Below, in pieces: positions 6,543-64,000 of a stretch of DNA of 64,000 nucleotides. Every line of letters starts with the position of its first letter. Position 1 is the first letter of the stretch. Origin of the DNA: Haplodiscus bocki (Eukaryota). The translations under genes were made by a program, and so were the position numbers. Below the pieces are notes generated by a model that saw nothing but the letters and a program-made list of their open reading frames with translations, searched no databases and had not been told where the DNA came from. The stretch spans positions 23,064,001 through 23,128,000 of the forward strand of contig OZ296648.1 in NCBI GenBank assembly GCA_965655095.1, written 5' to 3'.

Positions 6543-7145
<603 letters not shown>

Positions 7146-12159: not shown

Positions 12160-12767
12160 GCATGCAAAATACTGAAAATGTCTTCCAGCGTAACATTCCA
12201 AAACCTGCAACTTCTTCGTATCAAAAAATCATTTCATTTCACAAATTTGGGCCTTCTATTTACTAAGTTCGAGCTGTGAAATGTACAGTAAGGTCAAAAG
12301 AAATCGTTTTACTCGGCATTCTACAGCGTTAATTAGCCAATAGCAAATTGTTAAATGCTTTATTTGAATTTTAATTGGTTGACAATCGCAAAATTTGATT
12401 AGTTTTCGGGTTGAAATGATTTCGGAAAATCACGTGGCCGAAAACTTACGTGAATCTCCTGATCCAATTGAAATAATTAGAGTGCGAAAATTATTTCCCA
12501 ATTACAAAAGTATCAGCATTTCAAAACTTGAAGATCCGTAAATCCTATTTTAAAACAAGTAAATGCAAAATTTTCAACAATAAAAAATCGATAATTTTCT
12601 TATTTCAATTTTTTTATTGAAATCAAACTACATCAGTAGCTTTGAGAGATTCTGGGCAAGCGTTCGAATGGAAAACGTTTCGAAAACTATCCTAAAACTC
12701 CTATATATAATCTAAAATTGTCCAAAAAATATTTTTAAGTTCTACAACATTGGTCGGAAGAATTTCA

Positions 12768-22285: not shown

Positions 22286-22406
22286 ACGAAAAATGTACCA
22301 GCTGCAGTTAATTCTGAAAAAAAGCATGATGCTAACTAAGACCGAAGATAAGACATTACCATAAATTGAAAAAAATACTCAAAAACAATCAAAAAAAATT
22401 CCTTAC

Positions 22407-23473
22407 GTCAAAAACTTGTTCTGATCTAAATGGCTCTTGTAAATATCAGCGGGAAGTTTGGGTTCCATGATATCTAATTCTCTAGCAAGAGCCAAAAAGT
22501 TTCCATTCAGCTTTCCATTAGTCATGATTTCTTTCAGTTCGTCAACGTCAGCATCTTCTTCAGAAACATTCATAGCTTCAAGTTCCAAGTAGATCTGTTG
22601 TCGTCCCAACATGAAAGACAATTGCTTCTGTAATTGACTGGTTTGGGATGATTCAAAAACGTCGACCATCAAAGTTGTATCGTTCAAACACATAGCGAGA
22701 CGCATGGCATCCGGCAATTTATCGAATTTACGGTAAATTTTATAAGCACATTTCAACAAGTTAGTATTCTCGGGTTCAGCGACATACTTCACACAACTAA
22801 TCAAGTACAGACAAACTCGACTGTACGTGTTGATATCACAATACTCAACAAGCGCGTCCAAATTCTCGATCTCCATGAGAATATCACATGCATCGGATTC
22901 AGCGTTGTGCTGCATAAAATAGGGAACAATTTCTTTTACTATATTCTGTAGTTCATCTCGTTTATCGTTCACATCAGCAGCTTCGACATCAAGAGAGTTC
23001 CACACAGTGCCTATTTCGTTTGATACATGTAAAACGTACTCATGGCCCCATGATCCTATGGCTTCACGAGACCCAAGTTTTCGGTAATTCAAACAATCAT
23101 TATCTTCTGAGCAAACCATCGCCAACACTGACAAAATATCAGCGCACAGCTTTCGATTTTCCTGCGAATCTAACTTGAAGTATACCTCTTCTTTCAAAAG
23201 TTTATAATGGGGCATTAAAAACTTCAAAGGTTTAGGAACAGATGTCATTGAATTCGTTGATTCACGTAGCTTAGACCGGAGCAGTTCAAGAGCATCTTTC
23301 TGCTCCACTTGAGAAGCATTCTGTAATTTTTCGACAGTGGTATTCAACTCTTCCTGTAAAGCTTTATCCTCCTCAGAAAGTTCTGGGGGCGCATCTTTTT
23401 TCAATGCGGTTTTCTCCGAATCGCCAGAACTTTTTTCTTGTTGTGAAGTAGATTTAGATTCAAGAGGAGCCAT
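22407..23473 (-). CDS. PSMD2: PSMD2/RPN1 coding exon 1 (spliced CDS 2820 nt, 939 aa)
   Basis: ELSEEDKALQEEL...STNSMTSVPKPLKFL...WGHEYV...HNAESDACDILMEIE...ARELDIMEPKLPADIYKSHL; donor GTAAGG at 22406. ATG at 23473 preferred because acceptor ttcttttttcag lies 5 nt upstream. Confidence 0.95.
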
Positions 23474-24379
23474 CAGGTCTGAAAAAAGAACTGCAATCAT
23501 TTAAAGTTCGTTCTAGTTCATATCGGCTGTTATATTTAGTCAACACTTCCACGAGAAAAGCTCCCGACCATTACAATTTTCTTTATTGTAAAAACACAGA
23601 ACTCTTTTCATGGAAAACAATTTTCTTCCGGAATTGCCCATGTCCACCTCATTATGACCAGTGATCAGCATCGATTTATTGGCAATATTATTTCATTGGA
23701 GCTACCTGCAATGATAGAATTGTGATTGCCACACAATGATCAGAGAAGAATCATTGATGAGGAAAAATCAAAAGGCATTGCCATCAATTGGCAGGTCAAA
23801 AATCACAAAATTCAGTTGTACAGTCTGCAGAGAACTTTATCGAGAGAAGAACTATCTCAGAGGTCATTGCATTATAGGCTCTGAGATACAATCATCCTAT
23901 GACTGCAAAATATCCAGAAAAATTTTTTACGCTCACCATCAGATCTGAAACAAGACTACTCGCTACGAACTTTGTTGTAGATTTTTCACCTGGAGCGTAC
24001 TTTTTTGGAAACCTTTTAATCAAATTTGGCATTTTTGGAACTTAAAAATTGCTGATTTCTTGCAAAGACCTCTAATTCTGGTGGAAAAGATATTGCAAGT
24101 AAAAAATTATATAACTACCGTACGCTTGTACTACGCTTGTTCTATTCATGACCTCGAACGATGATAGGAACTGACAGATGTAAGGACATGTGAGCCTGGA
24201 TATATGTTCTTCAAATCCCATGTACTTGCGGGATACTCTCCACAGTTTCTTCAGCCAGAGTTCTCCACCGTTGTGTAGTCGGCAGTTTTTGGGGTTGGTC
24301 GTTGATTCAGGACTCGAGGATTTTGGAATCTCCATTGAAGTTGATCAGTTCTACGATTCGATCTTCGTCGTAAATGTCA

Positions 24380-24545
24380 GGGTACAATTATTTGTCTGAT
24401 CTGTGCTCGATGTCTCTCACCCTAAAAAAGGAAGTGTCGCGAAGTTTCTTCCCCTTTTTGGCCTATGCAATTTCGTGACAGCACTAAGCTGCAATTGTAA
24501 CCGGTTTGCAAGGCTCTGACACCTATAGAGTAGTAACCTGTGGAT
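24380..24545 (-). mobile_element. 3' remnant of the founder non-LTR retrotransposon ORF2 (degenerate CCHC zinc knuckle)
   Basis: Minus translation YNCSLVLSRNCIGQKGEETSRHFLF*GERHRAQIR; GGC and GGT are each one substitution from Cys, giving C-x-C-x8-H-x4-C with the typical ETxxHxL. Confidence 0.65.
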
Positions 24546-27500
24546 TGGTCTTAAAACGCCAAGCGCTTGCTTGACAAGTTTGCTCTTGGTCGTGTAAAGG
24601 AAGCAAAACTTGTTCCGTGGAAGACATGAAAGTGGAGTCTGATCAAAGTTTTAGGGCACAAATCCCACTCGAAGTCCAAGTGCTTAGCTCTTGACTGAGA
24701 AGGATGTTGGGTGGACATTTCATGTTTTTTCCACGGGATTTGAATGACAACCTGGAGTCAAACTTTATGCCTGGAATCCTGTAGCTATCTGAACTTAAAA
24801 AATAATAAACAGCCAATTTTTTTGCGATATCACATTTATGTCTAGAGAGCCGATTGGAACAAGTACAGTTTTCTTTATGCCCATAATGCGCCGCCGCTTG
24901 GTGCAGAAAAGAGAAATTTCATGAGGGCTGTTCTTGTTCGTCCGTCTAATTCGACATTGGTGTTTGTACTGATCAAGAGTCTGCCATCATTCGAACATTC
25001 GAACTTCTCCACTTCTATTCTGCAAAACATTTCCGAAACAAAAACAGCAGACAATACAGGTGAAAGAACTGCACCCTGTAGCGTTCCGATGTTGGTTTTG
25101 AACGTTTCACTTTTCGTGGTCGCCAATTCCAAAGTATGAACTACGGTTGTTGAGGAACTCCCGAAGGAAGTCAAAGAGGTGGCCAGAAATTCCGATGTTG
25201 TTACGCTTCCACAGTAGTCCATTCACCCAGACAGCGTCGAGGGCATTTTAAAGGTCCATTGATATAAAAGCGCCAAATAGATTTCTCGTTGTCAAGATTT
25301 TGCAATCAGTCATCATTCGGTACAAAACTTGTAGGGTGCTCTTGTGTTCTTCGGATCCAGATCCAAACGATTTTTTTGTTCTGCAAAGTCTCTGACCAAT
25401 CAATCTAGCGCAATTTTGAAAATTTTTCCAACATCGCTGGATGCTGTGATGGAGCGGTATGACGAAAGTCTGGAGTATTTCGTTTTCCTTGGTTTCCAAA
25501 GAAGTACGACTTTGCGGCTTTCCCGTGGACAGGTTTTTGTTCAATCCTTTTTTGATCTGTTGAATCTTGAGTTCGGTGAATTTAGGTCCAGTCCTCTCCA
25601 GCATTTTTCCCTGAACATTGTTCGTGTCAAAGACTGTGGGCAGTTGTTTGGTTGCGTAGTTTTCTCCTTGCCAGCTCAGAGGTCGTTGCACCCGTGGGTT
25701 TCATCCCTTCTTGTACAGTTTTTCCACTTTTTGGCTTATGCAGTTTCGTGAGGGCACTAAGCTGCAATTGTAACCACAGTTTGCAAGGCTCTGATACCTA
25801 TAGAGCTTTAACCTGTGGATTGTTTTTGTAAAATCAGAGTGCAAGACAGGCGAAGCCATAGGTTTCAGTTCCGATTCTTGGATTGGCACTGGTGTTGAAA
25901 TACTCTGCTCAATTCTTCTTCGTCTTAAGGTCCGTTTGTGGTCAAAAAATGTACTACACCTGCACGGTTGTCGTTCTACTCATTGCAAATTGTGACTTTT
26001 TCGGGGTCTTTAAAATCCTGCATCCTTGCTTCACAGTCTTGCCTTGGTACTCCATTACACAGCTTTTCACGTTGTCGTTTGATAGCATTTTTGGGGAACC
26101 TTGCTTTCAGTCTCTCGCAGTGTGGGTCTAGCGGGGGCGGGGGGTCTCGGCTAAAACAACCCACTGCAGTTGCTACTCGATATTAAAACGCCTGGCGCTT
26201 GCTTGACAATTTCGCTCCTGGTAGTGTAAAGGAAGCAAAATTTTTTCCGTGCTCACAGTGGCGCTTCGTATAATTTTTTTGCCATGAAGTCATGAAAGTG
26301 GAGTCTGCTCAGTGTTTTAGGGCACAATACCCACTCGAATTCTAAGCGCTTAGTTCTTGCCTGAGAGTGATGTTAGGTGGACATTTCATGTTTTTTCCAA
26401 GGGATTTGAATGACAACCTGGAGTCAAACTTCATGCCTGGAATCTTGTAGCTATCGGAACTTAAAAAATGTTAAACAGCCAATTTTTTTGCGGAATTACG
26501 TTTATGTCTAGAGAGCTGGTTGGAACAATTACAGTTTTCTCTATGCTCAAATTGAGCCGCCGCTTGGTGCAGAAAGGAGAAATTTCTTGACGGCTGTTCT
26601 GGTTCGTCCGTCTAATTCGACATTGGTGTTTGCACTGATCAAGATTCTGCCATCATTCGAACATTCGAACTTCTCCACTTCTATTCTGCAAAACATTTCC
26701 GAAACAAAGTCAGCAGACAATACAGGTGAGAGAACTGCACCCTGTAGCGTTCCGATGTTGGTTTTGAACGTTTCACTTTTCGTGGTCGCCAATTCCAAAG
26801 TATGAACTACGGTTGTTGAGGAACTTCCGAAAGAAGCCAAAGAAGTGGCCAGAAATTCCAATGTTGTTACGCTTCCACAGTAGTCCATTCACCCAGACAG
26901 CGTCGACGGCTTTTTAAATTTCCATTGATATCAAAGCGCCAAGTAAATTTCTCGTTGTCAAGAATTTGCATTCAATCACCATTCGGTACAAAATTTGTAG
27001 GATGCTCTTGTGTTCTTCTGATCCAGATCCGAACGATTCTTTTGTTCTGCAAAGGCTCTGATCAATCAATCTAGCGCATTTTTGAATAATTTTCCAACAT
27101 CGCTGGATACTGTGATGGAGCGGTATGACGAAAGTCTGGAGTATTTGGTCTTCCCTGGTTTCCAAAGAAGTACGATTTTGCGGTTTTCCCGTGGACAGAT
27201 TTTTGTTCAACCCACTTTTGATCTGTTGAAGCATGAGTTCGCTGAAATTAGGTCCAGCCCTCCCCAGTATTTTTGCCTGAACAATGTTTGTGCCCAAGAC
27301 GGTGGGGAATTGTTTGATTGCCTAGTTTTCTTGCCAGCTCAAGGGTCGTTGCACCTGTGGGTTTCATCCCTGCTTGTACAGCTTCTTCCCCTTTTTGGCC
27401 TATGCATATTCATGAGGGCACTGAGCTGCAATTGTAAACGCAGTTTGCAAGGCTCTGACACCTACAGAGTAGTAGCCTGTGGATTGTTTATGTAAAATCA

Positions 27501-30500
27501 GAGTACAAGACAGGCGAAGCCATAGGTTTCAGTTTCGATTTTTGGATTGGTACTGGTGTTGAAATACTCTGCTCAATTTTCCTTCGTCTTCCGGTCCATT
27601 TGTTGTCAAAAAAGATAATACACCTGCACGGTTGTCGTTATCTTCACTGCAAATTGTGACTTCTTCGAAGTCTTCAAAATCTTGAATCCTTGCTTCACAG
27701 TCTTGCCTTGGGACTCCACTACACAGCTTTTCAATTTGTCGTTTGATAGCATTTTTTGGGGAACCTTGCTTTCTGTCTCTCGCAGTGTGGGTCTAGCGGG
27801 GCGGGGGGTCTCGGCTAAAACAACCCACTGCAGTTGCTACTCGATATTAAAACGCCTGGCGCTTGCTTGACAAGTTCGCTCCTGGTAGTGTAAAGGAAGC
27901 AAAATTTTTTCCGTGCTCACAGTGGCGCTTCGTATAAGTTTTTTGTCAGGAAGTCATGAAAGTGGAGTCTGCTCAGTGTTTTAGGGCACAATACCCACTC
28001 GAATTGTAAGCGCTTAGTTCTTGCATGAGATTGATATTAGGTGGACATTTCATATTTTTTCCAAGGGATTTGAATGACAACCTGGAGTCAAACTTCATGC
28101 CTGGAATCTTGTAGCTATCGGAACTTAAGAAACGTTAAACAGCCGATTTTTTTGCGGAATTACGTTTATGTCTAGAGAGCTGGTTGGAACAATCACAGTT
28201 TTCTCCATGCTCATATTGAGCCGCCGCTTGGTGCAGAAAGGAGAAATTTCATGAGGGCCGATCTTGTTCGTCCGTCTAATTCGACATTGGTGTTTGCACT
28301 GATCAAGAGTATGCCATCATCCGAACATTCGAACTTCTCCACTTCTATTCTGCAAAACATTTCCGAAACAAAATCAGCAGACAATACAGGTGAGAGAACT
28401 GCACCCTGCAGCGTTCCGATGTTGGTTTTGAACGTTTCACTTTTCGTGGTCGCCGCTTGCAAAGTATGAACTGCGGTTGTTGAGGAACTTCCGAAAGAAG
28501 CCAAAGAAGTGGCCAGAAATTCCGATGTTGTTACGCTTCCACAGTATTCCATTCAACCAGACAGCGTCGAAGGCTTTTTAAATGTTCATTGATATCAAAG
28601 CGCCAAGTAGATTTCTCGTTGTCAAGAAATTGCAGTCAATCATCATTTGGTACAAAACTTGTAGGGGGCTCTTGTGTTCTTCGGATCCAGATCCAAACGA
28701 TTCTTTTGTTCTGCAAAGGCTCTGATCAATCAATCTAGCGCATTTTTGAATAGTTTTCCAACATCGCCGGATACTGTGATGGAGTGGTATGATGAAAGTC
28801 TGGAGTATTTGGTCTTCCCTGGTTTCCAAGGAAGTACGTTTTTGCGGTTTTCCCGTGGACAGATTTTTGTTCAACCCACTTTTGATCTGTTGAAGCATGA
28901 GTTCGCTGAAATTAGGTCCAGCCCTCCCCAGTATTTTTGCCTGAACAATGTTTGTGCCCAAGACGGTGGGGAATTGTTTGATTGCCTAGTTTTCTCCTTG
29001 CCAGCTCAGGGGTCGTTGCACCTGTGGGTTTCATCCCTGCTTGTACAGCTTCTTCCCCTTTTTGGCCTATGCATATTCGTGAGGGCACTGAGCTGCAATT
29101 GTAAACGCAGTTTGCAAGGCTCTGACACCTATAGAGTAGAAGCCTGTGGGTTGTTTATGTAAAATCAGAGTGCAAGACAAGCGAAGCCATAGGTTTCAGT
29201 TTCGATTTTTGGATTGGTACTGGTGTTGAAATACTCTGCTCAATTTTCCTTCGTCTCCCGGTCCATTTGTGGTCAAAAAAGATAATACACCTGCACGGTT
29301 GTCGTTCTCTTCAATGCAAATTGTGACTTCTTCGAAGTCTTCAAAATCCTGAATCCTTGCTTCCAGTCTTGCCTTGGGCCTCCACTACACAGCTTTTCAC
29401 GTTGTCGTTTGATAGCATTTTTTGGGGAACCTTGCTTTCAGTCTCTCGCAGTGTGGGTCTAGCGGGGGCGGGGGGTCTCGGCTAAAACAACCCACTGCAG
29501 TTGCTACTCGATATTAAAACGCCTGGCGCTTGCTTGACAATTTCGCTCCTGGTAGTGTAAAGGAAGCAAAATTTTTTCCGTGCTCACAGTGGCGCTTCGT
29601 ATAAGTTTTTTGTCAGGAAGACATGAATGTGGAGTCTGCTCAGTGTTTTAGGGCATAATACCCACTCGAATTCTAAGCGCTTAGTTCTTGCCTGAGAGTG
29701 ATGTTAGGTGGACATTTCATGTTTTTTCCAAGGGATTTGAATGACAACCTGGTGTCAAACTTCATGCCTGGAATCTTGTAGCTATCGGAACTTAAGAAAC
29801 GTTAAACAGCCGATTTTTTTGCGGAATTACGTTTATGTCTAGAGAGCTGGTTGGAACAATTACAGTTTTCTCTATGCTCAAATTGAGCCGCCGCTTGGTG
29901 CAGAAAGGAGAAATTTCATGAGGGCTGTTCTTGTTCGTCCGTCTAATTCGACATTGGTGTTTGCACTGATCAAGAGTATGCCATCATCCGAACATTCGAA
30001 CTTCTCCACTTCTATTCTGCAAAACATTTCCGAAACAAAATCAGCAGACAATACAGTTGAGAGAACTGCACCCTGCAGCGTTCCGATGTTGGCTTTGAAC
30101 GTTTCACTTTTCGTGGTCGCCGCTTCCAAGGTATGAACTGCGGTTGTTGAGGAACTTCCGAAAGAAGCCAAAGAAGTGGCCAGAAATTCCGATGTTGTTA
30201 CGCTTCCACAGTAGTCCATTCACCCAGACAGCGTCGAAAGCTTTTTAAATGTTCATTGATATCAAAGCGCCAAGTAGACTTCTCGTTGTCAAGAATTTGC
30301 AGTCAATCGTCATTCGGTACAAAACTTGTAGGATGCTCTTGTGTTCTTCGGATCCAGATCCAAACGATTCTTTTGTTCTGCAAAGGCTCTGATCAATCAA
30401 TCTAACGCATTTTTGAATAATTTTCCAACATCGCTGGATACTGTGATGGAGCGGTATGACGAAGGCATTGAGTAATTCGTTTTCCCTGGTTTCCAAAGAA

Positions 30501-33500
30501 GTACGACATTGCAGTTTTCACATGGACAGATTTTTTTCTATCCAATTTTGAACTGTTGAAGCCTGAGTTCGCTGAAACTAGGTCCAGCCCTCTCCAGCAT
30601 TTTGGCCTGAACAATGTTTGTGTCAAAGACTGTGGGAAGTTGTTTGATTGCGTAGTTTTCTCCTTGCCAGCTCAGAGGTCGTTGCACCCGTGGGTTTCAT
30701 CCCTGCTTGTACAGCTTCTTCCACTTTTTGGTCTATGCATATTCGTGAGGGCACTGAGCTGCAATTGTAAACGCAGTTTGCAAGGCTCTGACACCTATAG
30801 AGCAGTGGCCTGTGGATTGTTTATGTAAAATCAGAGTGCAAGACAGGCGAAGCCATAGGTTTCAGTTTCGATTTTTGGATTGGTACCGGTGTTGAAATAC
30901 TCTGCTCAATTTTCCTTCGTCTTCGCGTCCATTTGTGGTCAAAAAAGGTAATACACCTGCACGGTTGTCGTTCTCTTCACTGCAAATTGTGACTTCTTCG
31001 AAGTCTTCAAAACCCTGAATCCGTGCTTCACAGTCTTGCCTTGGGACTCCACTACACAGCTTTTCACGTCGTTTGATAGCATTTTTTGGGGAACCTTGCT
31101 TTCAGTCTCTCGCAGTGTGGGTCTAGCGGGGGCGGGGGGTCTCGGCTAAAACAACCCACTGCAGTTGCTACTCAATATTAAAACGCCTGACGCTTGCTTG
31201 ACAAGTTCGCTCCTGGTAGTGTAAAGGAAGCAAAATTTTTTCCGTGCTCACAGTGGCGCTTCGTATAAGTTTTTTGTCAGGAAGTCATGAAAGTGGAGTC
31301 TCCTCAGTGTTTTAGGGCACAATACCCACTCGAATTCTAAGCGCTTAGTTCTTGCCTGAGAGTGTTGTTATGTTGACATTTCATGTTTTTCCAAGGGATT
31401 TGAATGACAACCTGGAGTCAAACTTCATGCCTGGAATCTTGTAGCTATCGGAACATAAAAAATGTTAAACAGCCAAAATTTTTGCGGAATTACGTTTATG
31501 TCTAGAGAGCTGGTTGGAACAATTACAGTTTTCTCTATGCTCAAATTGAGCCGCCGCTTGGTGCAGAAAGGAGAAATTTCTTGAGGGCTGTTCTGGTTCG
31601 TCCGTCTAATTCGACATTGGTGTTTGCACTGATCTGCCATCATTCGAACATTCGAACTTCTCCACTTCTATTCTGCAAAACATTTCCGAAACAAAATCAG
31701 CAGACAATACAGGTGAGAGAACTGCACCCTGCAGCGTTCCGATGTTGGTTTTGAACGTTTCACTTTTCGTGGTCGCCGCTTGCAAGGTATGAAATGCGGT
31801 TGTTGAGGAACTTCCGAAAGAAGCCAAAGAAGTGGCCGGAAGTTCCGATGTTGTTACGCTTCCACAGTAGTCCATTCACCCAGACATCGTCGAAGGGTTT
31901 TTAAATGTTCATTGATATCAAAGCGCCAAGTAGATTTCTCGTTGTCAAGAAATTGCAGTCAATGATCATTCGGTACAAAACTTGTAGGGTGCTCTTGTGT
32001 TCTTCGGATCCAGATCCAAACGATCCTTTTGTTCTGCAAAAGCTCTGAGCAATGCATCTAGCGCACTACTGAATAATTTTCCAACATCGGTGGATAATGT
32101 GATGGAGCGGTATGACGAAGGCATTGAGTAATTCGTTTTCCCTGGTTTCCAAAGGAGTACGACTTTGCAGTTTTCACATGGACAGATTTTTTGCTCTGTC
32201 CATTTTTGATTTGTTGAAGCCTGAGTTCGCTGAAACTAGGTCCAGCCCTCTCCAGCATTTTGGCCTGAACAATGTTTGTGTCAAAGACTGTGGGAAGTTG
32301 TTTGATTGCGTAGCTTTCTCCTTGCCAGCTCAGAGGTCGTTGCACCCGTGGGTTTCATCCCTGCTTGTACAGCTTCTTCCCCTTTCTGGTCTATGCATAT
32401 TCGTGAGGGCACTGAGCTGCAATTGTAAACGCAGTTTGCAAGGCTCTGACACCTATAGAGCAGTGGCCTGTGGATTGTTTATGTAAAATCAGAGTGCAAG
32501 ACAGGCGAAGCCATAGGTTTCAGTTTCGATTTTTGGATTGGTACCGGTGTTGAAATACTCTGCTCAATTTTCCTTCGTCTTCGCGTCCATTTGTGGTCAA
32601 AAAAGGTAATACACCTGCACGGTTGTCGTTCTCTTCACTGCAAATTGTGACTTCTTCGAAGTCTTCAAAACCCTGAATCCGTGCTTCACAGTCTTGCCTT
32701 GGGACTCCACTACACAGCTTTTCACGTCGTTTGATAGCATTTTTTGGGGAACCTTGCTTTCAGTCTCTCGCAGTGTGGGTCTAGCGGGGGCGGGGGGTCT
32801 CGGCTAAAACAACCCACTGCAGTTGCTACTCGATATTAAAACGCCTGGCGCTTGCTTGACAAGTTCGCTCCTGGTAGTGTAAAGGAAGCAAAATTTTTTC
32901 CGTGCTCACAGTGGCGCTTCGTATTAGTTTTTTGTCAGGAAGTCATGAAAGTGGAGTCTGCTCAGTGTTTTAGGGCACAATACCCACTCGAATTCTAAGC
33001 GCTTAGTTCCTGCCTGAGAGTGATGTTAGGTGGACATTTCATGTTTTTCCAAGGGATTTGAATGACAACCTGGAGTCAAACTTCATGCCTGGAATCTTGT
33101 AGCTATCGGAACTTAAGAAACGTTAAACAGCCGATTTTTTTGCGGAATTACGTTTATGTCTAGAGAGCTGGTTGGAACAATTACAGTTTTCTCTATGCTC
33201 AAATTGAGCCGCCCCTTGGTGCAGAAAGGAGAAATTTCATGAGGGCTGTTCTTGTTCGTCCGTCTAATTCGACATTGGTGTTTGCACTGATCAAGATTCT
33301 GCCATCATTAGAACATTCGAACTTCTCCACTTCTATTCTGCAAAACATTTCCGAAACAAAATCAGCAGACAATACATGTGAGAGAACTGCACCCTGCAGC
33401 GTTCCGATGTTGGTTTTGAACGTTTCACTTTTCGTGGTCGCCGCTTGCAAAGTATGAACTGCGGTTGTTGAGGAACTTCCGAAAGAAGCCAAAGAAGTGG

Positions 33501-54500: not shown

Positions 54501-57500
54501 GCTACTCGATATTAAAACGCCTGGCGCTTGCTTGACAATTTCGCTCCTGGTAGTGTAAAGGAAGCAAAATTTTTTCCGTGCTCACAGTGGCGCTTCGTAT
54601 AAGTTTTTTGTCAGGAAGACATGAATGTGGAGTCTGCTCAGTGTTTTAGGGCATAATACCCACTCGAATTCTAAGCGCTTAGTTCTTGCCTGAGAGTGAT
54701 GTTAGGTGGACATTTCATGTTTTTCCAAGGGATTTGAATGACAACCTGGTGTCAAACTTCATGCCTGGAATCTTGTAGCTATCGGAACTTAAAAAATGTT
54801 AAACAGCCAATTTTTTTGCGGAATTACGTTTATGTCTAGAGAGCTGGTTGGAACAATTACAGTTTTCTCTATGCTCAAATTGAGCCGCCGCTTGGTGCAG
54901 AAAGGAGAAATTTCATGAGGGCTGTTCTTGTTCGTCCGTCTAATTCGACATTGGTGTTTGCACTGATCAAGAGTATGCCATCATCCGAACATTCGAACTT
55001 CTCCACTTCTATTCTGCAAAACATTTCCGAAACAAAATCAGCAGACAATACAGGTGAGAGAACTGCACCCTGCAGCGTTCCGATGTTGGCTTTGAACGTT
55101 TCATTTTTCGTGGTCGCCGCTTCCAAAGTATGAACTGCGGTTGTTGGGGAACTTCCGAAAGAAGCCAAAGAAGTGGCCAGAAATTCCGATGTTGTTACGC
55201 TTCCACAGTAGTCCATTCACCCAAACAGCGTCGAAGGCTTTTTAAATGTTCATTGATATCAAGGCGCCAAGTAGATTTCTCGTTGTCGAGAATTTGCAGT
55301 CAATCGTCATTCGGTACAAAACTTGTAGGGTGCTCTTGTGTTCTTCGGATCCAGATCCAAACGATCCTTTTGTTCTGCAAAAGCTCTGAGCAATGAATCT
55401 AGCGCACTACTGAATAATTTTCCAACATCGGTGGATAATGTGATGGAGCGGTATGACGAAGGCATTGAGTAATTCGTTTTCCGTGGTTTCCAAAGAAGTA
55501 CGACTTTGCAGTTTTCACATGGACAGATTTTTTTTCTATCCATTTTTGACCTGTTGAAGCCTGAGTTCGCTGAAACTAGGTCCAGCCCTCTCCAGCATTT
55601 TGGCCTGAACAATGTTTGTGTCAAAGACTGTGGGAAGTTGTTTGATTGCGTAGTTTTCTCCTTGCCAGCTCAGAGGTCGTTGCACCCGTGGGTTTCATCC
55701 CTGCTTGTACAGCTTCTTCCCTTTTTTGGCCTATGCATATTCGTGAGGGCACTGAGCTGCAATTGTAAACGCAGTTTGCAAGGCTCTGACACCTATAGAG
55801 TAGTAGCCTGTGGATTGTTTATGTAAAATCAGAGTGCAAGACAGGCGAAGCCATAGGTTTCAGTTTCGATTTTTGGATTGGTATTGGTGTTGAAATTCTC
55901 TGCTCAATTGTTCTTCGTCTTCCGGTCCATTTGCGGTCAAAAAAAGATAATATACCTGCATGGTTGTTGTTCTCTTCACTGCAAATTGTGACTTTTTTCG
56001 AAGTCTTTAAAATCTTCAATCCTTGTTTCACAGTCTTGCCTTGGGACTCCACTACACAGTTTTTCACGTTGTCGTTTGATAGCATTTTTTGGGGAACCTT
56101 GCTTTCACTCTCTCGCAGTCTGGGTCTAGCGGGGGCGGGAGGTCTCGGCTAAAACAACCCAGTGCAGTTGCTACTCGATATTAAAACGCCTGGCGCTTGC
56201 TTGACAATTTCGCTCCTGGTAGTGTAAAGGAAGCAAAATTATTTCCGTGCTCACAGTGGCGCTTCGTATAAGTTTTTTGTCAGGAAGACATGAATGTGGA
56301 GTCTGCTCAGTGTTTTAGGGCACAATACCCACTCGAATTCTAAGCGCTTAGTTCTTGTCTGAGAGTGATGTTAGCTGGACATTTCATGTTTTTTCCAAGG
56401 GATTTGAATGACAACCTGGAGTCAAACTTCATGCCTGGAATCTTGTAGCTATCGGAACTTAAAAAATGTTAAACAGCCAATTTTTTTGCGGAATTACGTT
56501 TATGTCTAGAGAGCTGGTTGGAACAATTACAGTTTTCTCTATGCTGAAATTGAGCCACAGCTTGGTGCAGAAAGGAGAAATTTCATGAGGGCTGTTCTTG
56601 TTCGTCCGTCTAATTCGACATTGGTGTTTGCACTGATCAAGAGTATGCCATTATCCGAACATTCGACCTTCTCCTCTTCTATTCTGCAAAATATTTCCGA
56701 AAAAAAAATCAGCAGACAATACAGGTGAGAGAACTGCACCCTGCAGCGTTCCGATGTTGGCTTTGAACGTTTCACTTTTCGTGGTCGCCGCTTCCAAGGT
56801 ATGAACTGCGGTTGTTGAGGAACTTCCGAAAGAAGCCAAAGAAGTGGCCAGAAATTCCGATGTTGTTACGCTTCCACAGTAGTCCATTCACCCAGACAGC
56901 GTCGAAAGCTTTTTAAATGTTCATTGATATCAAAGCGCCAAGTAGACTTCTCGTTGTCGAGAATTTGCAGTCAATCGTCATTCGGTACAAAACTTGTAGG
57001 GTGCTCTTGTGTTCTTCGGATCCAGATCCAAACGATCCTTTTGTTCTGCAAAAGCTCTGAGCAATGAATCTAGCGCACTACTGAATAATTTTCCAACATC
57101 GGTGGATAATGTGCTGGAGCGGTATGACGAAGGCATTGAGTAATTCGTTTTCCGTGGTTTCCAAAGAAGTACGACTTTGCAGTTTTCACATGGACAGATT
57201 TTTTGCTCTGTCCATTTTTGATTTGTTGAAGCCTGAGTTCGCTGAAACTAGGTCCAGCCCTCTCCAGCATTTTGGCCTGAACAATGTTTGTGTCAAAGAC
57301 TGTGGGAAGTTGTTTGATTGCGTAGTTTTCTCCTTGCCAGCTCAGAGGTCGTTGCACCCGTGGGTATCATCCCTGCTTGTACAGCTTCTTCCCTTTTGGC
57401 CTATGCATATTCGTGAGGGCACTGAGCTGCAATTGTAAACGCAGTTTGCAAGGCTCTGACACCTATAGAGTAGTAGCCTGTGGATTGTTTATGTCAAATC

Positions 57501-60500
57501 AGAGTGCAAGACAGGCGAAGCCATAGGTTTCAGTTTCGATTTTTGGAATGGTATTGGTGCTGAAATTCTCTGCTCAATTTTTCTTCGTCTTCCGGTCCAT
57601 TTGTGGTCAAAAAAGATAATACACCTGCATGGTTGTCGTTCTCTTCACTGCAAATTGTGACATCTTCGAAGTCTTCAAAATCCTGAATCCGTGCTTCACA
57701 GTCTTGCATTGGGACTCCACTACACAGCTTTTCACGTTGTCGTTTGATAGCATTTTTTGGGGAACGTTGCTTTCAGTCTCTCGCAGTGTGGGTCTAGCGG
57801 GGGCGGGGGGTCTCGGCTAAAACAACCCACTGCAGTTGCTACTCGATATTAAAACGCCTGGCGCTTGCTTGACAATTTCGCTCCTGGTAGTGTACAGGAA
57901 GCAAAATTTTTTCCGTGCTCACAGTGGCGCTTCGTATAAGTTTTTTGTCCGGAAGACATGAACGTGGAGTCTGCTCAGTGTTTTAGGGCACAATACCCAC
58001 TCGAATTCTAAGCGCTTAGTTCTTGCCTGAGAGTGTTGTTAGGTGGACATTTCATGTTTTTTCCAAGGGATATGAATGACAACCTGGAGTCAAACTTCAT
58101 GCCTGGAATCTTGTAGCTATCGGAACTTAAAAAATGTTAAACAGCCAATTTTTTTGCGGAATTACGTTTATGTCTAGAGAGCTGGTTGGAACAATTACAG
58201 TTTTCTCTATGCTCAAATTGAGCCGCCGCTTGGTGCAGAAAGGAGAAATTTCATGAGGGCTGTTCTTGTTCGTCCGTCTAATTCGACATTGGTGTTTGCA
58301 CTGATCAAGAGTATGCCATCATCCGAACATTCGAACTTCTCCACTTCTATTCTGCAAAACATTTCCGAAAAAAAAATCAGCAGACAATACAGGTGAGAGA
58401 ACTGCACCCTGCAGCGTTCCGATGTTGGCTTTGAACGTTTCACTTTTCGTGGTCGCCGCTTCCAAGGTATGAACTGCGGTTGTTGAGGAACTTCCGAAAG
58501 AAGCCAAAGAAGTGGCCAGAAATTCCGATGTTGTTACGCTTCCACAGTAGTCCATTCACCCAGACAGCGTCGAAGGCTTTTTAAATGTTCATTGATATCA
58601 AAGCGCCAAGTAGACTTCTCGTTGTCAAGAATTTGCAGTCAATCATCATTCGGTACAAAACTCGTAGGGTGCTCTTGTGTTCTTCGGATCCAGATGCAAA
58701 CGATCCTTTTGTTCTGCAAAAGCTCTGAGCAATGAATCTAGCGCACTACTGAATAATTTTCCAACATCGGTGGATAATGTGATGGAGCGGTATGACGAAG
58801 GCATTGAGTAATTCGTTTTCCCTGGTTTCCAAAGAAGTACGACTTTGCAGTTTTCACATGGACAGATTTTTTGCTCTGTCCATTTTTGATTTGTTGAAGC
58901 CTGAGTTCGCTGAAACTAGGTCCAGCCCTCTCCAGCATTTTGGCCTGAACAATGTTTGTGTCAAAGTCTGTGGGAAGTTGTTTGATTGCGTAGTTTTCTC
59001 CTTGCCAGCTCAGAGGTCGTTGCACCCGTGGGTTTCAACCCTGCTTGTACAGCTTCTTCCCTTTTGGCCTATGCATATTCGTGAGGGCACTGAGCTGCAA
59101 TTGTAAACGCAGTTTGCAAGGCTCTGACACCTATAGAGTAGTAGCCTGTGGATTGTTTATGTCAAATCAGAGTGCAAGACAGGCGAAGCCATAGGTTTCA
59201 GTTTCGATTTTTGGAATGGTATTGGTGCTGAAATTCTCTGCTCAATTTTTCTTCGTCTTCCGGTCCATTTGTGGTCAAAAAAGATAATACACCTGCATGG
59301 TTGTCGTTCTCTTCACTGCAAATTGTGACATCTTCGAAGTCTTCAAAATCCTGAATCCGTGCTTCACAGTCTTGCATTGGGACTCCACTACACAGCTTTT
59401 CACGTTGTCGTTTGATAGCATTTTTTGGGGAACGTTGCTTTCAGTCTCTCGCAGTGTGGGTCTAGCGGGGGCGGGGGGTCTCGGCTAAAACAACCCACTG
59501 CAGTTGCTACTCGATATTAAAACGCCTGGCGCTTGCTTGACAATTTCGCTCCTGGTAGTGTACAGGAAGCAAAATTTTTTCCGTGCTCACAGTGGCGCTT
59601 CGTATAAGTTTTTTGTCCGGAAGACATGAACGTGGAGTCTGCTCAGTGTTTTAGGGCACAATACCCACTCGAATTCTAAGCGCTTAGTTCTTGCCTGAGA
59701 GTGTTGTTAGGTGGACATTTCATGTTTTTTCCAAGGGATATGAATGACAACCTGGAGTCAAACTTCATGCCTGGAATCTTGTAGCTATCGGAACTTAAAA
59801 AATGTTAAACAGCCAATTTTTTTGCGGAATTACGTTTATGTCTAGAGAGCTGGTTGGAACAATTACAGTTTTCTCTATGCTCAAATTGAGCCGCCGCTTG
59901 GTGCAGAAAGGAGAAATTTCATGAGGGCTGTTCTTGTTCGTCCGTCTAATTCGACATTGGTGTTTGCACTGATCAAGAGTATGCCATCATCCGAACATTC
60001 GAACTTCTCCACTTCTATTCTGCAAAACATTTCCGAAAAAAAAATCAGCAGACAATACAGGTGAGAGAACTGCACCCTGCAGCGTTCCGATGTTGGCTTT
60101 GAACGTTTCACTTTTCGTGGTCGCCGCTTCCAAGGTATGAACTGCGGTTGTTGAGGAACTTCCGAAAGAAGCCAAAGAAGTGGCCAGAAATTCCGATGTT
60201 GTTACGCTTCCACAGTAGTCCATTCACCCAGACAGCGTCGAAGGCTTTTTAAATGTTCATTGATATCAAAGCGCCAAGTAGACTTCTCGTTGTCAAGAAT
60301 TTGCAGTCAATCATCATTCGGTACAAAACTCGTAGGGTGCTCTTGTGTTCTTCGGATCCAGATGCAAACGATCCTTTTGTTCTGCAAAAGCTCTGAGCAA
60401 TGAATCTAGCGCACTACTGAATAATTTTCCAACATCGGTGGATAATGTGATGGAGCGGTATGACGAAGGCATTGAGTAATTCGTTTTCCCTGGTTTCCAA

Positions 60501-63500
60501 AGAAGTACGACTTTGCAGTTTTCACATGGACAGATTTTTTGCTCTGTCCATTTTTGATTTGTTGAAGCCTGAGTTCGCTGAAACTAGGTCCAGCCCTCTC
60601 CAGCATTTTGGCCTGAACAATGTTTGTGTCAAAGTCTGTGGGAAGTTGTTTGATTGCGTAGTTTTCTCCTTGCCAGCTCAGAGGTCGTTGCACCCGTGGG
60701 TTTCAACCCTGCTTGTACAGCTTCTTCCCTTTTGGCCTATGCATATTCGTGAGGGCACTGAGCTGCAATTGTAAACGCAGTTTGCAAGGCTCTGACACCT
60801 ATAGAGTAGTAGCCTGTGGATTGTTTATGTCAAATCAGAGTGCAAGACAGGCGAAGCCATAGGTTTCAGTTTCGATTTTTGGAATGGTATTGGTGCTGAA
60901 ATTCTCTGCTCAATTTTTCTTCGTCTTCCGGTCCATTTGTGGTCAAAAAAGATAATACACCTGCATGGTTGTCGTTCTCTTCACTGCAAATTGTGACATC
61001 TTCGAAGTCTTCAAAATCCTGAATCCGTGCTTCACAGTCTTGCATTGGGACTCCACTACACAGCTTTTCACGTTGTCGTTTGATAGCATTTTTTGGGGAA
61101 CGTTGCTTTCAGTCTCTCGCAGTGTGGGTCTAGCGGGGGCGGGGGGTCTCGGCTAAAACAACCCACTGCAGTTGCTACTCGATATTAAAACGCCTGGCGC
61201 TTGCTTGACAATTTCGCTCCTGGTAGTCTACAGGAAGCACAATTTTTTCCGTGCTCACAGTGGCGCTTCGTATAAGTTTTTTGTCCGGAAGACATGAACG
61301 TGGAGTCTGCTCAGTGTTTTAGGGCACAATACCCACTCGAATTCTAAGCGCTTAGTTCTTGCCTGAGAGTGTTGATAGGTGGACATTTCATGTTTTTTCC
61401 AAGGGATATGAATGACAACCTGGAGTCAAACTTCATGCCTGGAATCTTGTAGCTATCGGAACTTAAAAAATGTTAAACAGCCAATTTTTTTGCGGAATTA
61501 CGTTTATGTCTAGAGAGCTGGTTGTAACAATTACAGTTTTCTCTATGCTCAAATTGAGCCGCCGCTTGGTGCAGAAAGGAGAAATTTCATGAGGGCTGTT
61601 CTTGTTCGTCCGTCTAATTCGACATTGGTGTTTGCACTGATCAAGAGTATGCCATCATCCGAACATTCGAACTTCTCCACTTCTATTCTGCAAAACATTT
61701 CCGAAAAAAAAATCAGCAGACAATACAGGTGAGAGAACTGCACCCTGCAGCGTTCCGATGTTGGCTTTGAACGTTTCACTTTTCGTGGTCGCCGCTTCCA
61801 AGGTATGAACTGCGGTTGTTGAGGAACTTCCGAAAGAAGCCAAAGAAGTGGCCAGAAATTCCGATGTTGTTACGCTTCCACAGTAGTCCATTCACCCAGA
61901 CAGCGTCGAAGGCTTTTTAAATGTTCATTGATATCAAAGCGCCAAGTAGACTTCTCGTTGTCAAGAATTTGCAGTCAATCATCATTCGGTACAAAACTCG
62001 TAGGGTGCTCTTGTGTTCTTCGGATCCAGATGCAAACGATCCTTTTGTTCTGCAAAAGCTCTGAGCAATGAATCTAGCGCACTACTGAATAATTTTCCAA
62101 CATCGGTGGATAATGTGATGGAGCGGTATGACGAAGGCATTGAGTAATTCGTTTTCCCTGGTTTCCAAAGAAGTACGACTTTGCAGTTTTCACATGGACA
62201 GATTTTTTGCTCTGTCCATTTTTGATTTGTTGAAGCCTGAGTTCGCTGAAACTAGGTCCAGCCCTCTCCAGCATTTTGGCCTGAACAATGTTTGTGTCAA
62301 AGACTGGGAAGTTGTTTGATTGCGTAGTTTCCTCCTTGCCAGCTCAGAGGTCGTTGCACCCGTGGGTTTCATCCCTGCTTGTACAGCTTCTTCCCTTTTT
62401 TGGCCTATGCATATTCGTGAGGGCACTGAGCTGCAATTGTAAGCGCAGTTTGCAAAGCTCTGACACCTATAGAGTAGTAGCCTGTGGATTGTTTATGTAA
62501 AATCAGAGTGCAAGACAGGCGAAGCCATAGTTTTCAGTTTCGATTTTTGGATTGGTATTGGTGCTGAAATTCTATGCTCAATTGTTCTTCGCCTTCCGGT
62601 CCCTTTGCGGTCAAAAAAAGATAATACACCTGCATGGTTGTTGTTCTCTTCACTGCAAATTGTGACTTTTTTCGAAGTCTTTAAAATCTTCAATCCTTGT
62701 TTCACAGTCTTGCCTTGGGACTCCACTACACAGTTTTTCACGTTGTCGTTTGATAGCCTTTTTTGGGAACCTTGCTTTCAGTCTCTCGCAGTGTGGGTGT
62801 AGTGGGGGCGGGGGGTCTTGGCTAAAACAACCCGCTGCAGGTGCTACTCGATATTAAAACGCCTGGCGCTTGCTTGACAATTTCGCTCCTGGTAGTGTAG
62901 AGGAAGCAAAATTTTTTCCGTGCTCACAGTGGCGCTTCGTATAAGTTTTTTGTCAGGAAGACATGAATGTGGAGTCTGCTCAGTGTTTTAGGGCACAATA
63001 CCCACTCGAATTCTAAGCGCTTAGTTCTTGCCTGAGAGTGATGTTTGGTGGACATTTCATGTTTTTTCCAAGGGATTTGAATGACAACCTGGAGTCAAAC
63101 TTCATGCCTGGAATCTTGTAGCTATCGGAACTTAAAAAATGTTAAACAGCCAATTTTTTTGCGGAATTACGTTTATGTCTAGAGAGCTGGTTGGAACAAT
63201 TACAGTTTTCTCTATGCTCAAATTGAGCCGCCGCTTGGTGCAGAAAGGAGAAATTTCATGAGGGCTGTTCTTGTTCGTCCGTCTAAGTCGACATTGGTGT
63301 TTGCACTGATCAAGAGTATGCCATCATCCGAACATTCGAACTTCTCCACTTCTATTCTGCAAAACATTTCCGAAAAAAAATCAGCAGACAATACAGGTGA
63401 GAGAACTGCACCCTGCAGCGTTCCGATGTTGGCTTTGAACGTTTCACTTTTCGTGGTCGCCGCTTCCAAGGTATGAACTGCGGTTGTTGAGGAACTTCCG

Positions 63501-64000
63501 AAAGAAGCCAAAGAAGTGGCCAGAAATTCCGATGTTGTTACGCTTCCACAGTAGTCCATTCACCCAGACAGCGTCGAAGGCTTCTTAAAAGTTCATTGAT
63601 ATCAAAGCGCCAAGTAGACTTCTCGTTGTCAAGAATTTGCAGTCAATCATCATTCGGTACAAAACTTGTAGGGTGCTCTTGTGTTCTTCGGATCCAGATC
63701 CAAACGATCCTTTTGTTTTGCAAAAGCTCTGAGCAATGAATCTAGCGCACTACTGAATAGTTTTCCAACATCGGTGGATAATGTGATGGAGCGGTATGAC
63801 GAAGGCATTGAGTAATTCGTTTTCCCTGGTTTCGAAAGAAGTACGACTTTGCAGTTTTCACATGGACAGATTTTTTGCTCTGTCCATTTTTGATTTGTTG
63901 AAGCCTGAGTTCGCTGAAACTAGGTCCAGTCCTCTCCAGCATTTTGGCCTGAACAATGTTTGTGTCAAAGACTGTGGGAAATTGTTTGATTGCTTAGTTT
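24443..64000 (-). repeat. Tandem macrosatellite: 24 head-to-tail copies of a ~1667-bp LINE ORF2-derived unit (first copy ~390 bp shorter, last cut by the window end)
   Basis: Marker ORF M(D/E)(Y/H)C starts at 25222, 26888, 28552 ... 61891, 63559 with spacing 1656-1671; copies are highly similar with no spacers. Confidence 0.98.
27383..29049 (-). pseudogene. Representative unit: decayed non-LTR reverse transcriptase (pre-RT linker, RT, thumb, start of CCHC)
   Basis: RT motifs in colinear order across frames, pieced from several copies: NIVQAKMLERAGP; KVVLLWKPGKTNYSMPSSYRSITLSTDVGKLF; FGSGS; LISMNI*KAFDAVWVNGLLWK; GTLQGAVLSPVL; F(E)CSDD (YADD site); LNLSIEKT; YKIPGMKFDSRLSF. Many stops and frameshifts. 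Confidence 0.9.

What the first reader, a model, noticed from the sequence alone, without database searches (positions are those of the whole stretch)
24443..64000. At least 39.5 kb macrosatellite built from the RT-to-CCHC segment of one dead LINE
Seen: 24 direct copies of ~1667 bp, each with colinear degenerate non-LTR RT motifs, and no endonuclease, ORF1, poly(A) tail or target-site duplication between copies. Known: retrotransposition gives variably 5'-truncated copies with an intact 3' end, so fixed-length internal units must arise at the DNA level (unequal crossover or rolling-circle/eccDNA reintegration). The KPGKxxYxxPxSYRxIxL motif resembles I-group (Tad1/R1/LOA-like) elements; only ~300 codons separate the catalytic site from the CCHC, leaving little room for RNase H. 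Inference: a young satellite born in place from TE coding sequence that may act as heterochromatin, centromeric DNA or a piRNA/siRNA source against the parent LINE family.
Basis: partly seen in the sequence, partly recalled or inferred. Interest (0 to 1): 0.85.

Follow-up and report, generated by a model that had tools for sequence, protein, structure and literature searches.

The report
Tandem array from a dead LINE
A 41 kb block of 25 head-to-tail copies of a 1.67 kb piece of one dead jumping gene (a LINE) grew in place by DNA duplication and unequal exchange just upstream of a proteasome gene; it is a clear example of a known way that satellite DNA arises, not a new kind of element.

Summary
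A 1,668-bp unit repeats head to tail from window 24443 past the window edge to position 65744 (25 whole units, 41.3 kb). The RT reading sense is on the minus strand. Units are colinear with the RT-to-C-terminus region of an old, decayed ~5.3 kb APE-type LINE family (65-76% DNA identity; tblastn E 1e-25 to 1e-54; relatives pass Pfam RVT_1).

"Born in place" is supported: the same LINE copy continues beyond both array edges. Each junction is a clean join at a short imperfect direct repeat (GAAGAAACT / GAACAACT) and cuts the C-terminal zinc knuckle in half.

Growth by unequal exchange is supported. Edge units are the most diverged (84-93%), interior blocks are 99-100% identical, and a second public assembly record has 24 units rather than 25.

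"Young" is only half right: the edge units differ by K2P 0.19, but turnover is recent. The I-group assignment is unresolved. Centromere, heterochromatin and piRNA roles have no support: the array is at a single locus, evolves neutrally (pN/pS ~1.5), has ordinary CpG content, and lies ~0.9 kb (its host LINE's 3' end ~0.7 kb) from the PSMD2/RPN1 start codon.

LINE-ORF2-derived satellites are already described. The scan's notes list about 100 macrosatellite observations in this genome; I confirmed kb-scale tandem periodicity at two of them.

The parts
24200..24442 (-). 3' terminal 243 bp of the host LINE, present once just outside the array. It holds the H-x4-C half of the ORF2 C-terminal zinc knuckle, the 3' UTR and the family's tail-less 3' end (...GGGATTTGAAGAACATATAT).
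   Evidence: Colinear with the 3' ends of dispersed copies at 74-82% identity. The family 3' end is conserved in 5 copies and has no poly(A).
24443..25717 (-). Edge unit U01 (1,275 bp), the last unit in RT sense. It carries a 361-bp internal deletion and is the most diverged unit (84-86% to all others).
25718..64000 (-). Units U02 to U24 (U24 is cut by the window edge), each 1,658-1,672 bp. U24 ends at position 64055 and U25, the first unit in RT sense (89-93% identity), ends at 65744.
   Evidence: Unit boundaries and identity matrix; continuation read in L013.
44039..50709 (-). Homogenised block U13-U16, 99-100% identical to each other and to U18. The pairs U12/U13 and U17/U18 show a duplication in a 5-unit register.
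   Evidence: Identity matrix; secondary 16-mer offset peak at 8,338 bp.
57384..62385 (-). Homogenised block U21-U23 (~100% identical). It lies in the zone (window ~52-62 kb) where the second assembly record has one unit fewer.
40682..40721 (-). A representative unit junction. In RT sense it reads ...GGGAAGAAGC|TGTACCAGCAGG... in this copy (most junctions read TGTACAAGCAGG), joining the unit's 3' site (inside the C-x-C..E-E|T..H....C knuckle) directly to its 5' site ~75 codons upstream of RVT_1, with no filler, tail or TSD.
   Evidence: Junctions of all units printed. The native 3' site (CAGAAGAAACT|TC) and native 5' site (GGAACAACTCTCA|GTACAAGC) are seen in dispersed copies. The 34-mer junction signature is found 22 times, only in this array.
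60317..60583 (-). Example in U22 of the RT N-terminal motifs (..KPGKTNYSMPSSYRSITLSTDVGKLF..).
   Evidence: Stop-free piece listed; aligned to the parental RT ORF.
59990..60223 (-). Example in U22 of the central RT motif (..GTLQGAVLSPVLS..). It is followed by the decayed catalytic box (CSDD/CSND, where a dispersed copy has FADD).
   Evidence: the equivalent piece of another unit (28214-28552) hits RVT_1 at E=0.0046.
22403..23500 (-). Context: the first coding exon of the 26S proteasome subunit RPN1/PSMD2, in the same orientation as the LINE. Its ATG is ~700 bp from the LINE 3' end and ~940 bp from the array.
   Evidence: Pfam RPN1_RPN2_N, E=1e-112.

Best explanation
One 5'-truncated copy of an old APE-type LINE inserted on the minus strand about 0.7 kb upstream of the PSMD2/RPN1 start codon and decayed. 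A 1,668-bp internal segment was then duplicated in tandem at the DNA level. That segment runs from ~75 codons upstream of the RT domain to the middle of the ORF2 C-terminal zinc knuckle. The join lies at a short imperfect direct repeat present at both ends of the segment (GAAGAAACT at the 3' site, GAACAACT at the 5' site), which points to a microhomology-mediated event such as replication slippage or template switching, or end-joining between sister chromatids. Once two copies existed, repeated unequal sister-chromatid or homologue exchange and gene conversion expanded the array to ~25 units. These processes keep homogenising the interior while the two edge units, which cannot pair out of register, drift apart. 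A later microhomology deletion trimmed the 5' edge, and a 361-bp deletion hit the 3' edge unit. The array is most likely non-functional and neutrally evolving. Shown directly: the anatomy, the in-place origin, the clean junction, the identity gradient, single-locus status and the lack of coding constraint. Inferred: the molecular pathway of the first duplication and the neutrality of the array as a whole.
For: Periodicity and tiling. Units are homologous to the RT region of a ~5.3 kb dispersed family, whose members hit RVT_1 at E=3.8e-7 above the cut-off and at E=1.4e-6 and 4.2e-6 just below it. tblastn of the parental RT ORF against units gives E 1e-25 to 1e-54, with frameshifts and stops. 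The host LINE continues colinearly 3' of the array (24442->24200) and 5' of it (65745->66120), and its 5' part resumes at 83275->85131. All junctions are identical clean joins at the short repeat. The identity matrix has diverged edges, 99-100% interior blocks and a 5-unit register duplication. K2P is 0.19 between the edge units, 0.047 on average in the interior, and 0.004 at minimum. The junction signature occurs only here in 1.5 Gb. A second public record (ENA ERZ26859043) has identical flanks but 24 units, and the difference lies in the homogenised zone. pN/pS is 1.46 for the only recurrent ORF. No Rfam family matches. The model matches published ones: a first duplication between 5-10 bp flanking repeats followed by unequal crossing-over (PMC6947457), and microhomology-mediated joining between sister chromatids (PMC9659126, PMC12628747).
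Against: The 5' edge is not simply colinear with the parent. About 170 bp of LINE is missing there, and a 16-nt junction-type remnant sits between the upstream LINE and the first full unit, so an extra deletion event must be assumed. The two short repeats are imperfect in the dispersed copies, and the founder's own 5' site is no longer preserved. The second assembly record may derive from the same reads, so it gives limited independent support, and the 24-versus-25 difference could be assembly uncertainty rather than polymorphism. Neutrality is inferred from sequence alone; no expression, small-RNA or chromatin data were available.
Confidence: 0.8

Rival explanations
1. Rolling-circle or eccDNA origin: the 1,668-bp segment was excised as a circle by recombination at the short direct repeat, amplified as a concatemer, and reintegrated into its parent LINE copy.
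For: A circle formed at the same short repeat would give the same junction. The non-colinear 5' edge, with a junction-type 16-nt remnant and ~170 bp of LINE missing, could be a non-homologous integration scar, while the 3' edge is homologous. The scan's notes describe many kb-unit arrays in this genome, and I confirmed kb-scale periodicity at two of them, which could point to a general amplification route.
Against: A concatemer made in one step would begin as identical units. The observed gradient (edges 84-93%, interior 94-100%, nested blocks) needs long-term unequal exchange anyway, so the circle step adds nothing the simpler model lacks. No solo circle-junction copies exist elsewhere in the genome.
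Confidence: 0.12
2. RT-mediated origin: repeated template jumps of the LINE reverse transcriptase during a single retrotransposition event, or serial insertion of LINE copies into each other's ends, produced the tandem units.
For: Head-to-tail LINE arrays made by retrotransposition exist (double-insertion model, PMC5932611). The template jump needs only microhomology like that seen at the junction.
Against: Every unit has identical internal boundaries and lacks the family's terminal 243 bp, which target-primed reverse transcription starts from. There are no variable 5' truncations, tails or TSDs between units. Unit divergence ranges from 0 to 19%, so the units were not made in one event. The units' RT is dead.
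Confidence: 0.03
3. Assembly artefact: a much shorter repeat was expanded by the assembler.
For: Several neighbouring units are 99.6-100% identical, and two records differ by one unit exactly in that zone.
Against: Most units carry private substitutions and indels and form a structured identity gradient that an artefact would not create. There are no gaps (no N in positions 1-93000). A separate contig-level record reproduces the flanks, the first ~11 units and the last ~2 units base for base, and has a total of 24 units.
Confidence: 0.03
4. Functional array: the repeat is kept because it acts as a small-RNA source against the parent LINE, a heterochromatin or insulator block upstream of PSMD2, or centromeric DNA.
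For: This rests only on analogy with TE-derived satellites that have such roles (PMC9659126, PMC6471113) and on the array's position directly upstream of a gene.
Against: The parent family is long dead: every close copy is riddled with stops and is only 65-76% identical to the units, so there is no active target. The array is at a single locus, which does not fit a shared centromeric satellite. CpG o/e is 0.79, like the dispersed copies (0.82-0.85) and the surrounding DNA. There is no conserved ORF or Rfam hit. It abuts the start of an essential housekeeping gene, an odd place for silent chromatin.
Confidence: 0.05

Closest known systems
LINE-ORF2-derived satellite DNAs (PROsat of Phodopus roborovskii, Pvc20 of harbour seal, chicken HinfI/SCR1 from CR1 3'UTR plus partial ORF2, common cetacean satellite from L1), as tabulated in PMC9659126
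   Same: The monomer is a non-terminal or partial coding segment of a LINE, tandemised at the DNA level and no longer coding.
   Different: Those satellites are abundant, often multi-locus and heterochromatic. This array is a single 41 kb locus with 25 units, and the founder LINE copy is still visible on both sides, so its birth site and breakpoints can be read directly.
Two-step model of minisatellite and satellite birth (Haber and Louis 1998, as summarised in PMC6947457): a first duplication between 5-10 bp direct repeats, then unequal crossing-over
   Same: A short imperfect direct repeat sits at both ends of the amplified segment, the junction is clean, and the array shows edge-diverged, centre-homogenised structure.
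   Different: The review notes that the model is thought hard to apply to long units because of the distance involved. Here the two sites are 1,668 bp apart, comparable to the >700 bp maize centromeric case cited there.
Human macrosatellites such as D4Z4 and DXZ4 (PMC5687341, PMC3081327)
   Same: Kilobase-sized units, arrays of tens of units at a single locus, and possible copy-number variation.
   Different: Those arrays have documented chromatin roles and transcripts. No function is shown here, and the unit is derived from a LINE RT.
Tandem TE arrays from double insertion (McGurk and Barbash 2018, PMC5932611)
   Same: A TE is the seed of a tandem array that later expands by unequal exchange.
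   Different: Double insertion gives units bounded by element termini. Here the units are internal fragments with identical breakpoints and no termini.

Membership tests
TE-derived macrosatellite (tandemised internal TE segment) | Head-to-tail array with a uniform kilobase period | tested here: met
   25 units of 1,658-1,689 bp, apart from one unit with a deletion.
TE-derived macrosatellite (tandemised internal TE segment) | Monomer homologous to part of a transposable element | tested here: met
   65-76% DNA identity over the whole unit to dispersed ~5.3 kb LINE copies; protein-level colinearity with an RVT_1-positive ORF.
TE-derived macrosatellite (tandemised internal TE segment) | Junctions lack element termini, tails and TSDs (DNA-level amplification) | tested here: met
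   Identical clean joins, and units lack the family's last 243 bp.
TE-derived macrosatellite (tandemised internal TE segment) | Concerted evolution: interior homogenised, edges diverged | tested here: met
   Identity matrix and K2P distances.
Satellite DNA in the strict sense | High copy number, usually at several loci or in heterochromatic blocks | tested here: not met
   The junction signature is found only in this one array in the 1.5 Gb assembly, and no other copy above 80% identity was found.
TE-derived macrosatellite (tandemised internal TE segment) | Copy-number polymorphism | tested here: inconclusive
   24 versus 25 units in two assembly records with identical flanks; this could be haplotype variation or assembly uncertainty.
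APE-type non-LTR retrotransposon (parent element) | Reverse transcriptase domain with the LINE-type motifs | tested here: met
   RVT_1 at E=3.8e-7 above the cut-off and at E=1.4e-6, 4.2e-6 and 2e-4 just below it in pieces of two other copies; FADD box present.
APE-type non-LTR retrotransposon (parent element) | N-terminal apurinic-type endonuclease in ORF2 | tested here: inconclusive
   No Pfam hit in the decayed pieces. There is a weak tblastn match of a relative's endonuclease region (E=1e-4). Remote relatives carry PF03372/PF14529.
APE-type non-LTR retrotransposon (parent element) | Copies share a common 3' end and have variable 5' truncation | tested here: met
   A conserved 3' terminus is readable in 5 of the 7 copies shown. 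The copies in L016, L018 and L022 and the host copy are truncated at different points.
APE-type non-LTR retrotransposon (parent element) | Target-site duplication flanking the host copy | tested here: not met
   No shared word of 7 nt or more between the two flanks. The insertion is old and its 5' boundary is imprecise, so this is weak negative evidence.
   No RNase H hit in any piece downstream of RT. Only ~310 codons lie between the catalytic box and the zinc knuckle.
   One zf-CCHC hit above the cut-off in one copy that does not recur in others. A sub-threshold PHD hit plus coiled-coil-type hits would equally fit the type IC ORF1 of CR1/L2 lineages (PMC4120745).
   No Repbase or RTclass1 reference set was available. 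Database relatives are unnamed and share only 24-28% identity over about half the query. There is no PDB hit.
Twin-priming 5' inversion (considered for the inverted LINE segment right of the array) | The inverted 5' segment directly abuts the direct 3' segment, and no direct-orientation 5' part exists | tested here: not met
   A foreign 155-bp fragment lies at the joint. The true 5' part lies in direct orientation 17 kb away, with breakpoints that abut (parent 2928 / 2924).

The most novel reading that the evidence does not exclude
This array is one instance of a genome-wide habit. The scan's notes describe about 100 macrosatellites in this animal's genome, 30-60 kb long with 1.7-3.3 kb monomers made of dead mobile-element or viral gene fragments. 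That could reflect a dedicated or unusually active amplification pathway (for example circle-based, or replication template-switching at TE sequences), or a TE-fragment 'trap' system that feeds small-RNA defence, rather than independent accidents of unequal exchange.
Probability: 0.12. Interest if true: 0.7.

Novelty: new member of a known kind. Interest (0 to 1): 0.3.

Why it matters
This is a well-preserved example of how a satellite can arise from transposon coding sequence. The founder LINE copy, both recombination sites, the clean junction, the edge-to-centre homogenisation gradient and a possible one-unit copy-number difference can all be read in one locus. That makes it a useful teaching or benchmark case, and a marker for unequal-exchange rates if population data exist. 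It does not change current understanding: LINE-ORF2-derived satellites and the two-step birth model are already published. The broader question worth following is why this genome appears to hold so many kb-unit macrosatellites made from mobile-element fragments.

Tried and rejected
- TRF found nothing because its period limit is 500 bp; I replaced it with k-mer offsets and BLAST.
- Single stop-free pieces of array units gave only a sub-threshold RVT_1 hit (E=0.0046), so RT identity was established through the parent family instead.
- I first read the inverted LINE segment at 66318-68035 as a twin-priming inversion. I rejected this after finding the foreign filler at the joint, a 96.7% identical direct-orientation copy 15 kb further on, and abutting breakpoints.
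- A "twin priming into repeat X" variant was rejected because the left flank is not X.
- Clade assignment failed: PHD and CCHC did not recur in other copies, the 5.8-billion-protein search gave only unnamed remote relatives, and the PDB gave no hit.
- No TSD was found. Rfam gave nothing. ORFs in the 17 kb insert and the right flank had no Pfam hits.
- One ORF look-up in other assemblies found nothing.
- The organism could not be named. Earlier notes suggest a coral; I did not test this. The sequence is not human: the genome is 1.5 Gb, and the RPN1 coding sequence lies in 347- and 365-codon open stretches.
- No consensus of the LINE or the units was printed or saved. A majority string was used only inside one script, to classify CpG columns.
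Full report
**Observation.** The composition of the window changes sharply at ~24 kb, from 34-40% to 42-45% GC with a negative AT skew. TRF reported nothing because its period limit is 500 bp. A 16-mer offset histogram peaks at 1,666-1,669 bp, with secondary peaks at 2, 3, 4 and 5 units. BLAST of one unit tiles window 24443-64000 continuously; each copy is 91-97% identical to the reference unit 40001-41668, and the truncated leftmost copy 82-87%. The window is G000:C1:23,064,001-23,128,000 of a 1.5 Gb eukaryotic assembly. Reading on in L013 shows that the array ends at window-equivalent 65744. After re-phasing at the true junction there are 25 units of 1,658-1,689 bp. The leftmost unit is 1,275 bp because of a 361-bp deletion.

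**Coding content.** All RT-like motifs are on the minus strand (KPGKTNYSMPSSYRSITL, GTLQGAVLSPVLS). No unit has an ORF longer than 165 codons. Single pieces give only a sub-threshold RVT_1 hit (E=0.0046). The unit is, however, 65-76% identical at the DNA level over its whole length to dispersed copies of a ~5.3 kb element. One copy of that element retains a 454-codon ORF that passes Pfam's RVT_1 cut-off (E=3.8e-7), and pieces of other copies reach E=1.4e-6 and 4.2e-6, just below it. tblastn of that ORF against individual units gives E 1e-25 to 1e-54 but requires frameshifts and read-through of stops. The catalytic box is FADD in a dispersed copy and CSDD/CSND in the units. Remote database relatives (24-28% identity over about half the query) carry RVT_1 plus APE-type endonuclease domains. 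The monomer is therefore a dead RT segment of an APE-type LINE.

**Parent family.** Every close copy is full of stops. The family's 3' end is conserved (...GGGATTTGAAGAACATATATA) and has no poly(A), so the missing A-tail is normal for it. No RNase H was found, and only ~310 codons separate the catalytic box from the C-terminal knuckle. ORF1 gave one zf-CCHC hit above the cut-off and one sub-threshold PHD hit with coiled-coil-type hits. Neither recurred in other copies. This could fit a type I ORF1 (I, Jockey, R1, Tad1 and related clades) or the PHD-CC-RRM-CCHC "type IC" ORF1 of CR1/L2 lineages (PMC4120745). The clade is unresolved, and the I-group suggestion is neither confirmed nor excluded, except that the I clade in the strict sense would need RNase H.

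**Born in place.** Full-length dispersed copies align to the DNA outside the array on both sides. The last unit runs colinearly into the LINE's terminal 243 bp (24442->24200). Upstream of the first unit, LINE sequence continues from 65745 to 66120 (parent ~2924-3300). I first took an oppositely oriented LINE segment at 66318-68035 (parent 1171-2892) for a twin-priming inversion. Further work rejected that reading. A 155-bp fragment of another repeat sits at the joint. A 96.7% identical copy of the segment lies at 83291-84934 in the same orientation as the array's LINE. LINE homology there runs from parent ~1020 to 2928 (85131->83275), abutting the 2924 breakpoint at 66120. So a single 5'-truncated LINE copy spans 24200 to 85131 in present coordinates. 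It has been altered twice: by the 41.3 kb tandem amplification, and by a 17.15 kb insertion or rearrangement (66121-83274) whose left end carries an inverted duplicate of the adjacent 1.7 kb of LINE. No TSD could be recovered.

**Junction anatomy.** Every internal junction reads, in RT sense...GGCCAAAAAGGGGAAGAAGC|TGTACAAGCAGGGATGAAAC.... The left half is the native 3' site of the family (CAGAAGAAACT|TCxCGACAC), which lies inside the ORF2 C-terminal knuckle C-x-C-x5-E-T-x2-H-x4-C. Each unit therefore keeps only the C-x-C half, and the H...C half occurs once at the array's 3' edge. The right half is the native 5' site (GGAACAACTCTCA|GTACAAGC), ~75 codons upstream of the Pfam RT start. The two sites share a short imperfect direct repeat, GAAGAAACT versus GAACAACT. 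The 5' edge of the array is not simply colinear with the parent: the LINE runs to ...GGAGAAGTTGGGTAA, then a 16-nt junction-type remnant (AAAACAGGAAGAAAC) follows, and then full units begin. About 170 bp of parent sequence is missing there. This is most simply explained by a later deletion between A-rich microhomologies.

**Growth and age.** The identity matrix has the classic shape for unequal exchange. The edge units are 84-86% (U01) and 89-93% (U25) identical to the rest, and U02-U03 are 90-95%. The interior is 94-97%, with nested blocks at 99-100% (U8-9; U13-16 with U18; U21-23) and a duplication in a 5-unit register (U12/13 to U17/18). K2P is 0.186 between the two edge units, 0.047 on average in the interior, and 0.004 at minimum. 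The array is therefore old in origin and recently active in turnover, not simply "young".

**Second assembly record.** A second public record (ENA ERZ26859043, a 485 kb contig) carries the same locus. Its left 20 kb is 99.99% identical to the window, with two mismatches that both lie outside the array. Its right flank and last ~2 units are identical. Two marker ORFs are 30,019 bp apart rather than 31,684 bp, which is one unit fewer, and the difference lies in the homogenised zone at ~52-62 kb. This reproduces the ~40 kb scale and argues against gross assembly expansion. The one-unit difference may be haplotype variation or assembly uncertainty.

**Function.** The junction 34-mer occurs 22 times within three mismatches. 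All hits are in this array, with none elsewhere in 1.5 Gb and none for the control pattern. No other locus exceeds ~76% identity to the unit. The only recurrent ORF (113 codons, intact in 16 units) has pN/pS 1.46. No Rfam family matches. CpG o/e is 0.79, similar to dispersed copies (0.82-0.85) and to neighbouring DNA (0.77-0.96). The array lies ~940 bp, and the LINE's 3' end ~700 bp, upstream of the ATG of the first coding exon of RPN1/PSMD2, in the same orientation. Nothing here supports a centromeric, heterochromatic or small-RNA role. The parent family has no intact copies left to defend against. These roles cannot be excluded without expression and chromatin data.

**Comparison with the literature.** Satellites derived from LINE ORF2 or 3' regions are documented: PROsat, Pvc20, chicken HinfI/SCR1 and the cetacean common satellite (PMC9659126). 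Tandemisation of TE sub-segments is a recognised route (PMC12628747). So is the two-step model of a first duplication between very short flanking repeats followed by unequal crossing-over, although it is considered harder to apply to long units (PMC6947457). Units bounded by element termini, as in the double-insertion model (PMC5932611), are not what is seen here. This array is a new member of a known kind. Its merit is that the birth site is preserved.

**Wider context.** The scan's notes list about 100 "macrosatellite" observations in this genome, many said to be built from mobile-element or viral gene fragments. I tested two that lie on the same chromosome and confirmed kilobase-scale tandem periodicity only: ~3.29 kb at C1:54.37 Mb and ~6.7-8.8 kb at C1:8.62 Mb. 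I did not check their content. Whether this abundance reflects a special mechanism is the most interesting open reading, and it remains untested.

**Limits.** The organism was not identified. Earlier notes guess a coral, which I did not test, and the sequence is not human. No reads, RNA or chromatin data were available.

Noticed in passing
outside the window: window-equivalent 66121-83274 (G000:C1:23130121-23147274; L013, L040, L041): A 17.15 kb insertion or rearrangement splits the host LINE at parent position ~2924/2928. Its left end carries a 155-bp fragment of another repeat and a 96.7% identical inverted duplicate (66314-68054) of the adjacent LINE 5' part (83291-84934). This gives 1.7 kb inverted repeats around ~15 kb of DNA with no Pfam hits. 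It looks like a replication-based inverted duplication.
   Followed up: partly
outside the window: window-equivalent 68050-68905 (L013:5050-5905): A ~890-bp dispersed repeat with more than 25 copies at 72-74% identity across the genome. It has sharp common ends (query 1962-2840) and is unclassified.
   Followed up: no
G000:C7:57913232-57973756: Six matches to a LINE RT (27-29% identity to the parent ORF), most spaced about 9.4-9.6 kb apart. This may be another tandem array whose ~9.5 kb unit contains a LINE.
   Followed up: no
G000:C1:54374001-54394000 (L042, L043) and G000:C1:8620001-8640000 (L044, L045): Two other kilobase-period tandem arrays on the same chromosome: a strong ~3.29 kb period, and a weaker ~6.7-8.8 kb one. 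Only the periodicity of these arrays from the scan's notes was confirmed.
   Followed up: partly
window 10384-12210 (-): A 608-codon open reading frame with no Pfam hit, lying downstream of the RPN1/PSMD2 exons on the same strand. Its nature is unknown.
   Followed up: no
L018 (G000:C2:150932500-150942499), RT-sense 4537-6406: A dispersed 5'-truncated copy of the LINE family begins within ~17 bp of the array unit's 5' boundary and is among the best-matching dispersed copies (73-75% identity). This is probably coincidence, but it could mark a preferred truncation or break point.
   Followed up: no
L019 (G000:C1:182648000-182657999), positions ~5815-6816: A second partial copy of the same LINE family's 5' region starts ~170 bp after a 3'-truncated copy, giving a head-to-tail LINE pair at another locus.
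   Followed up: no
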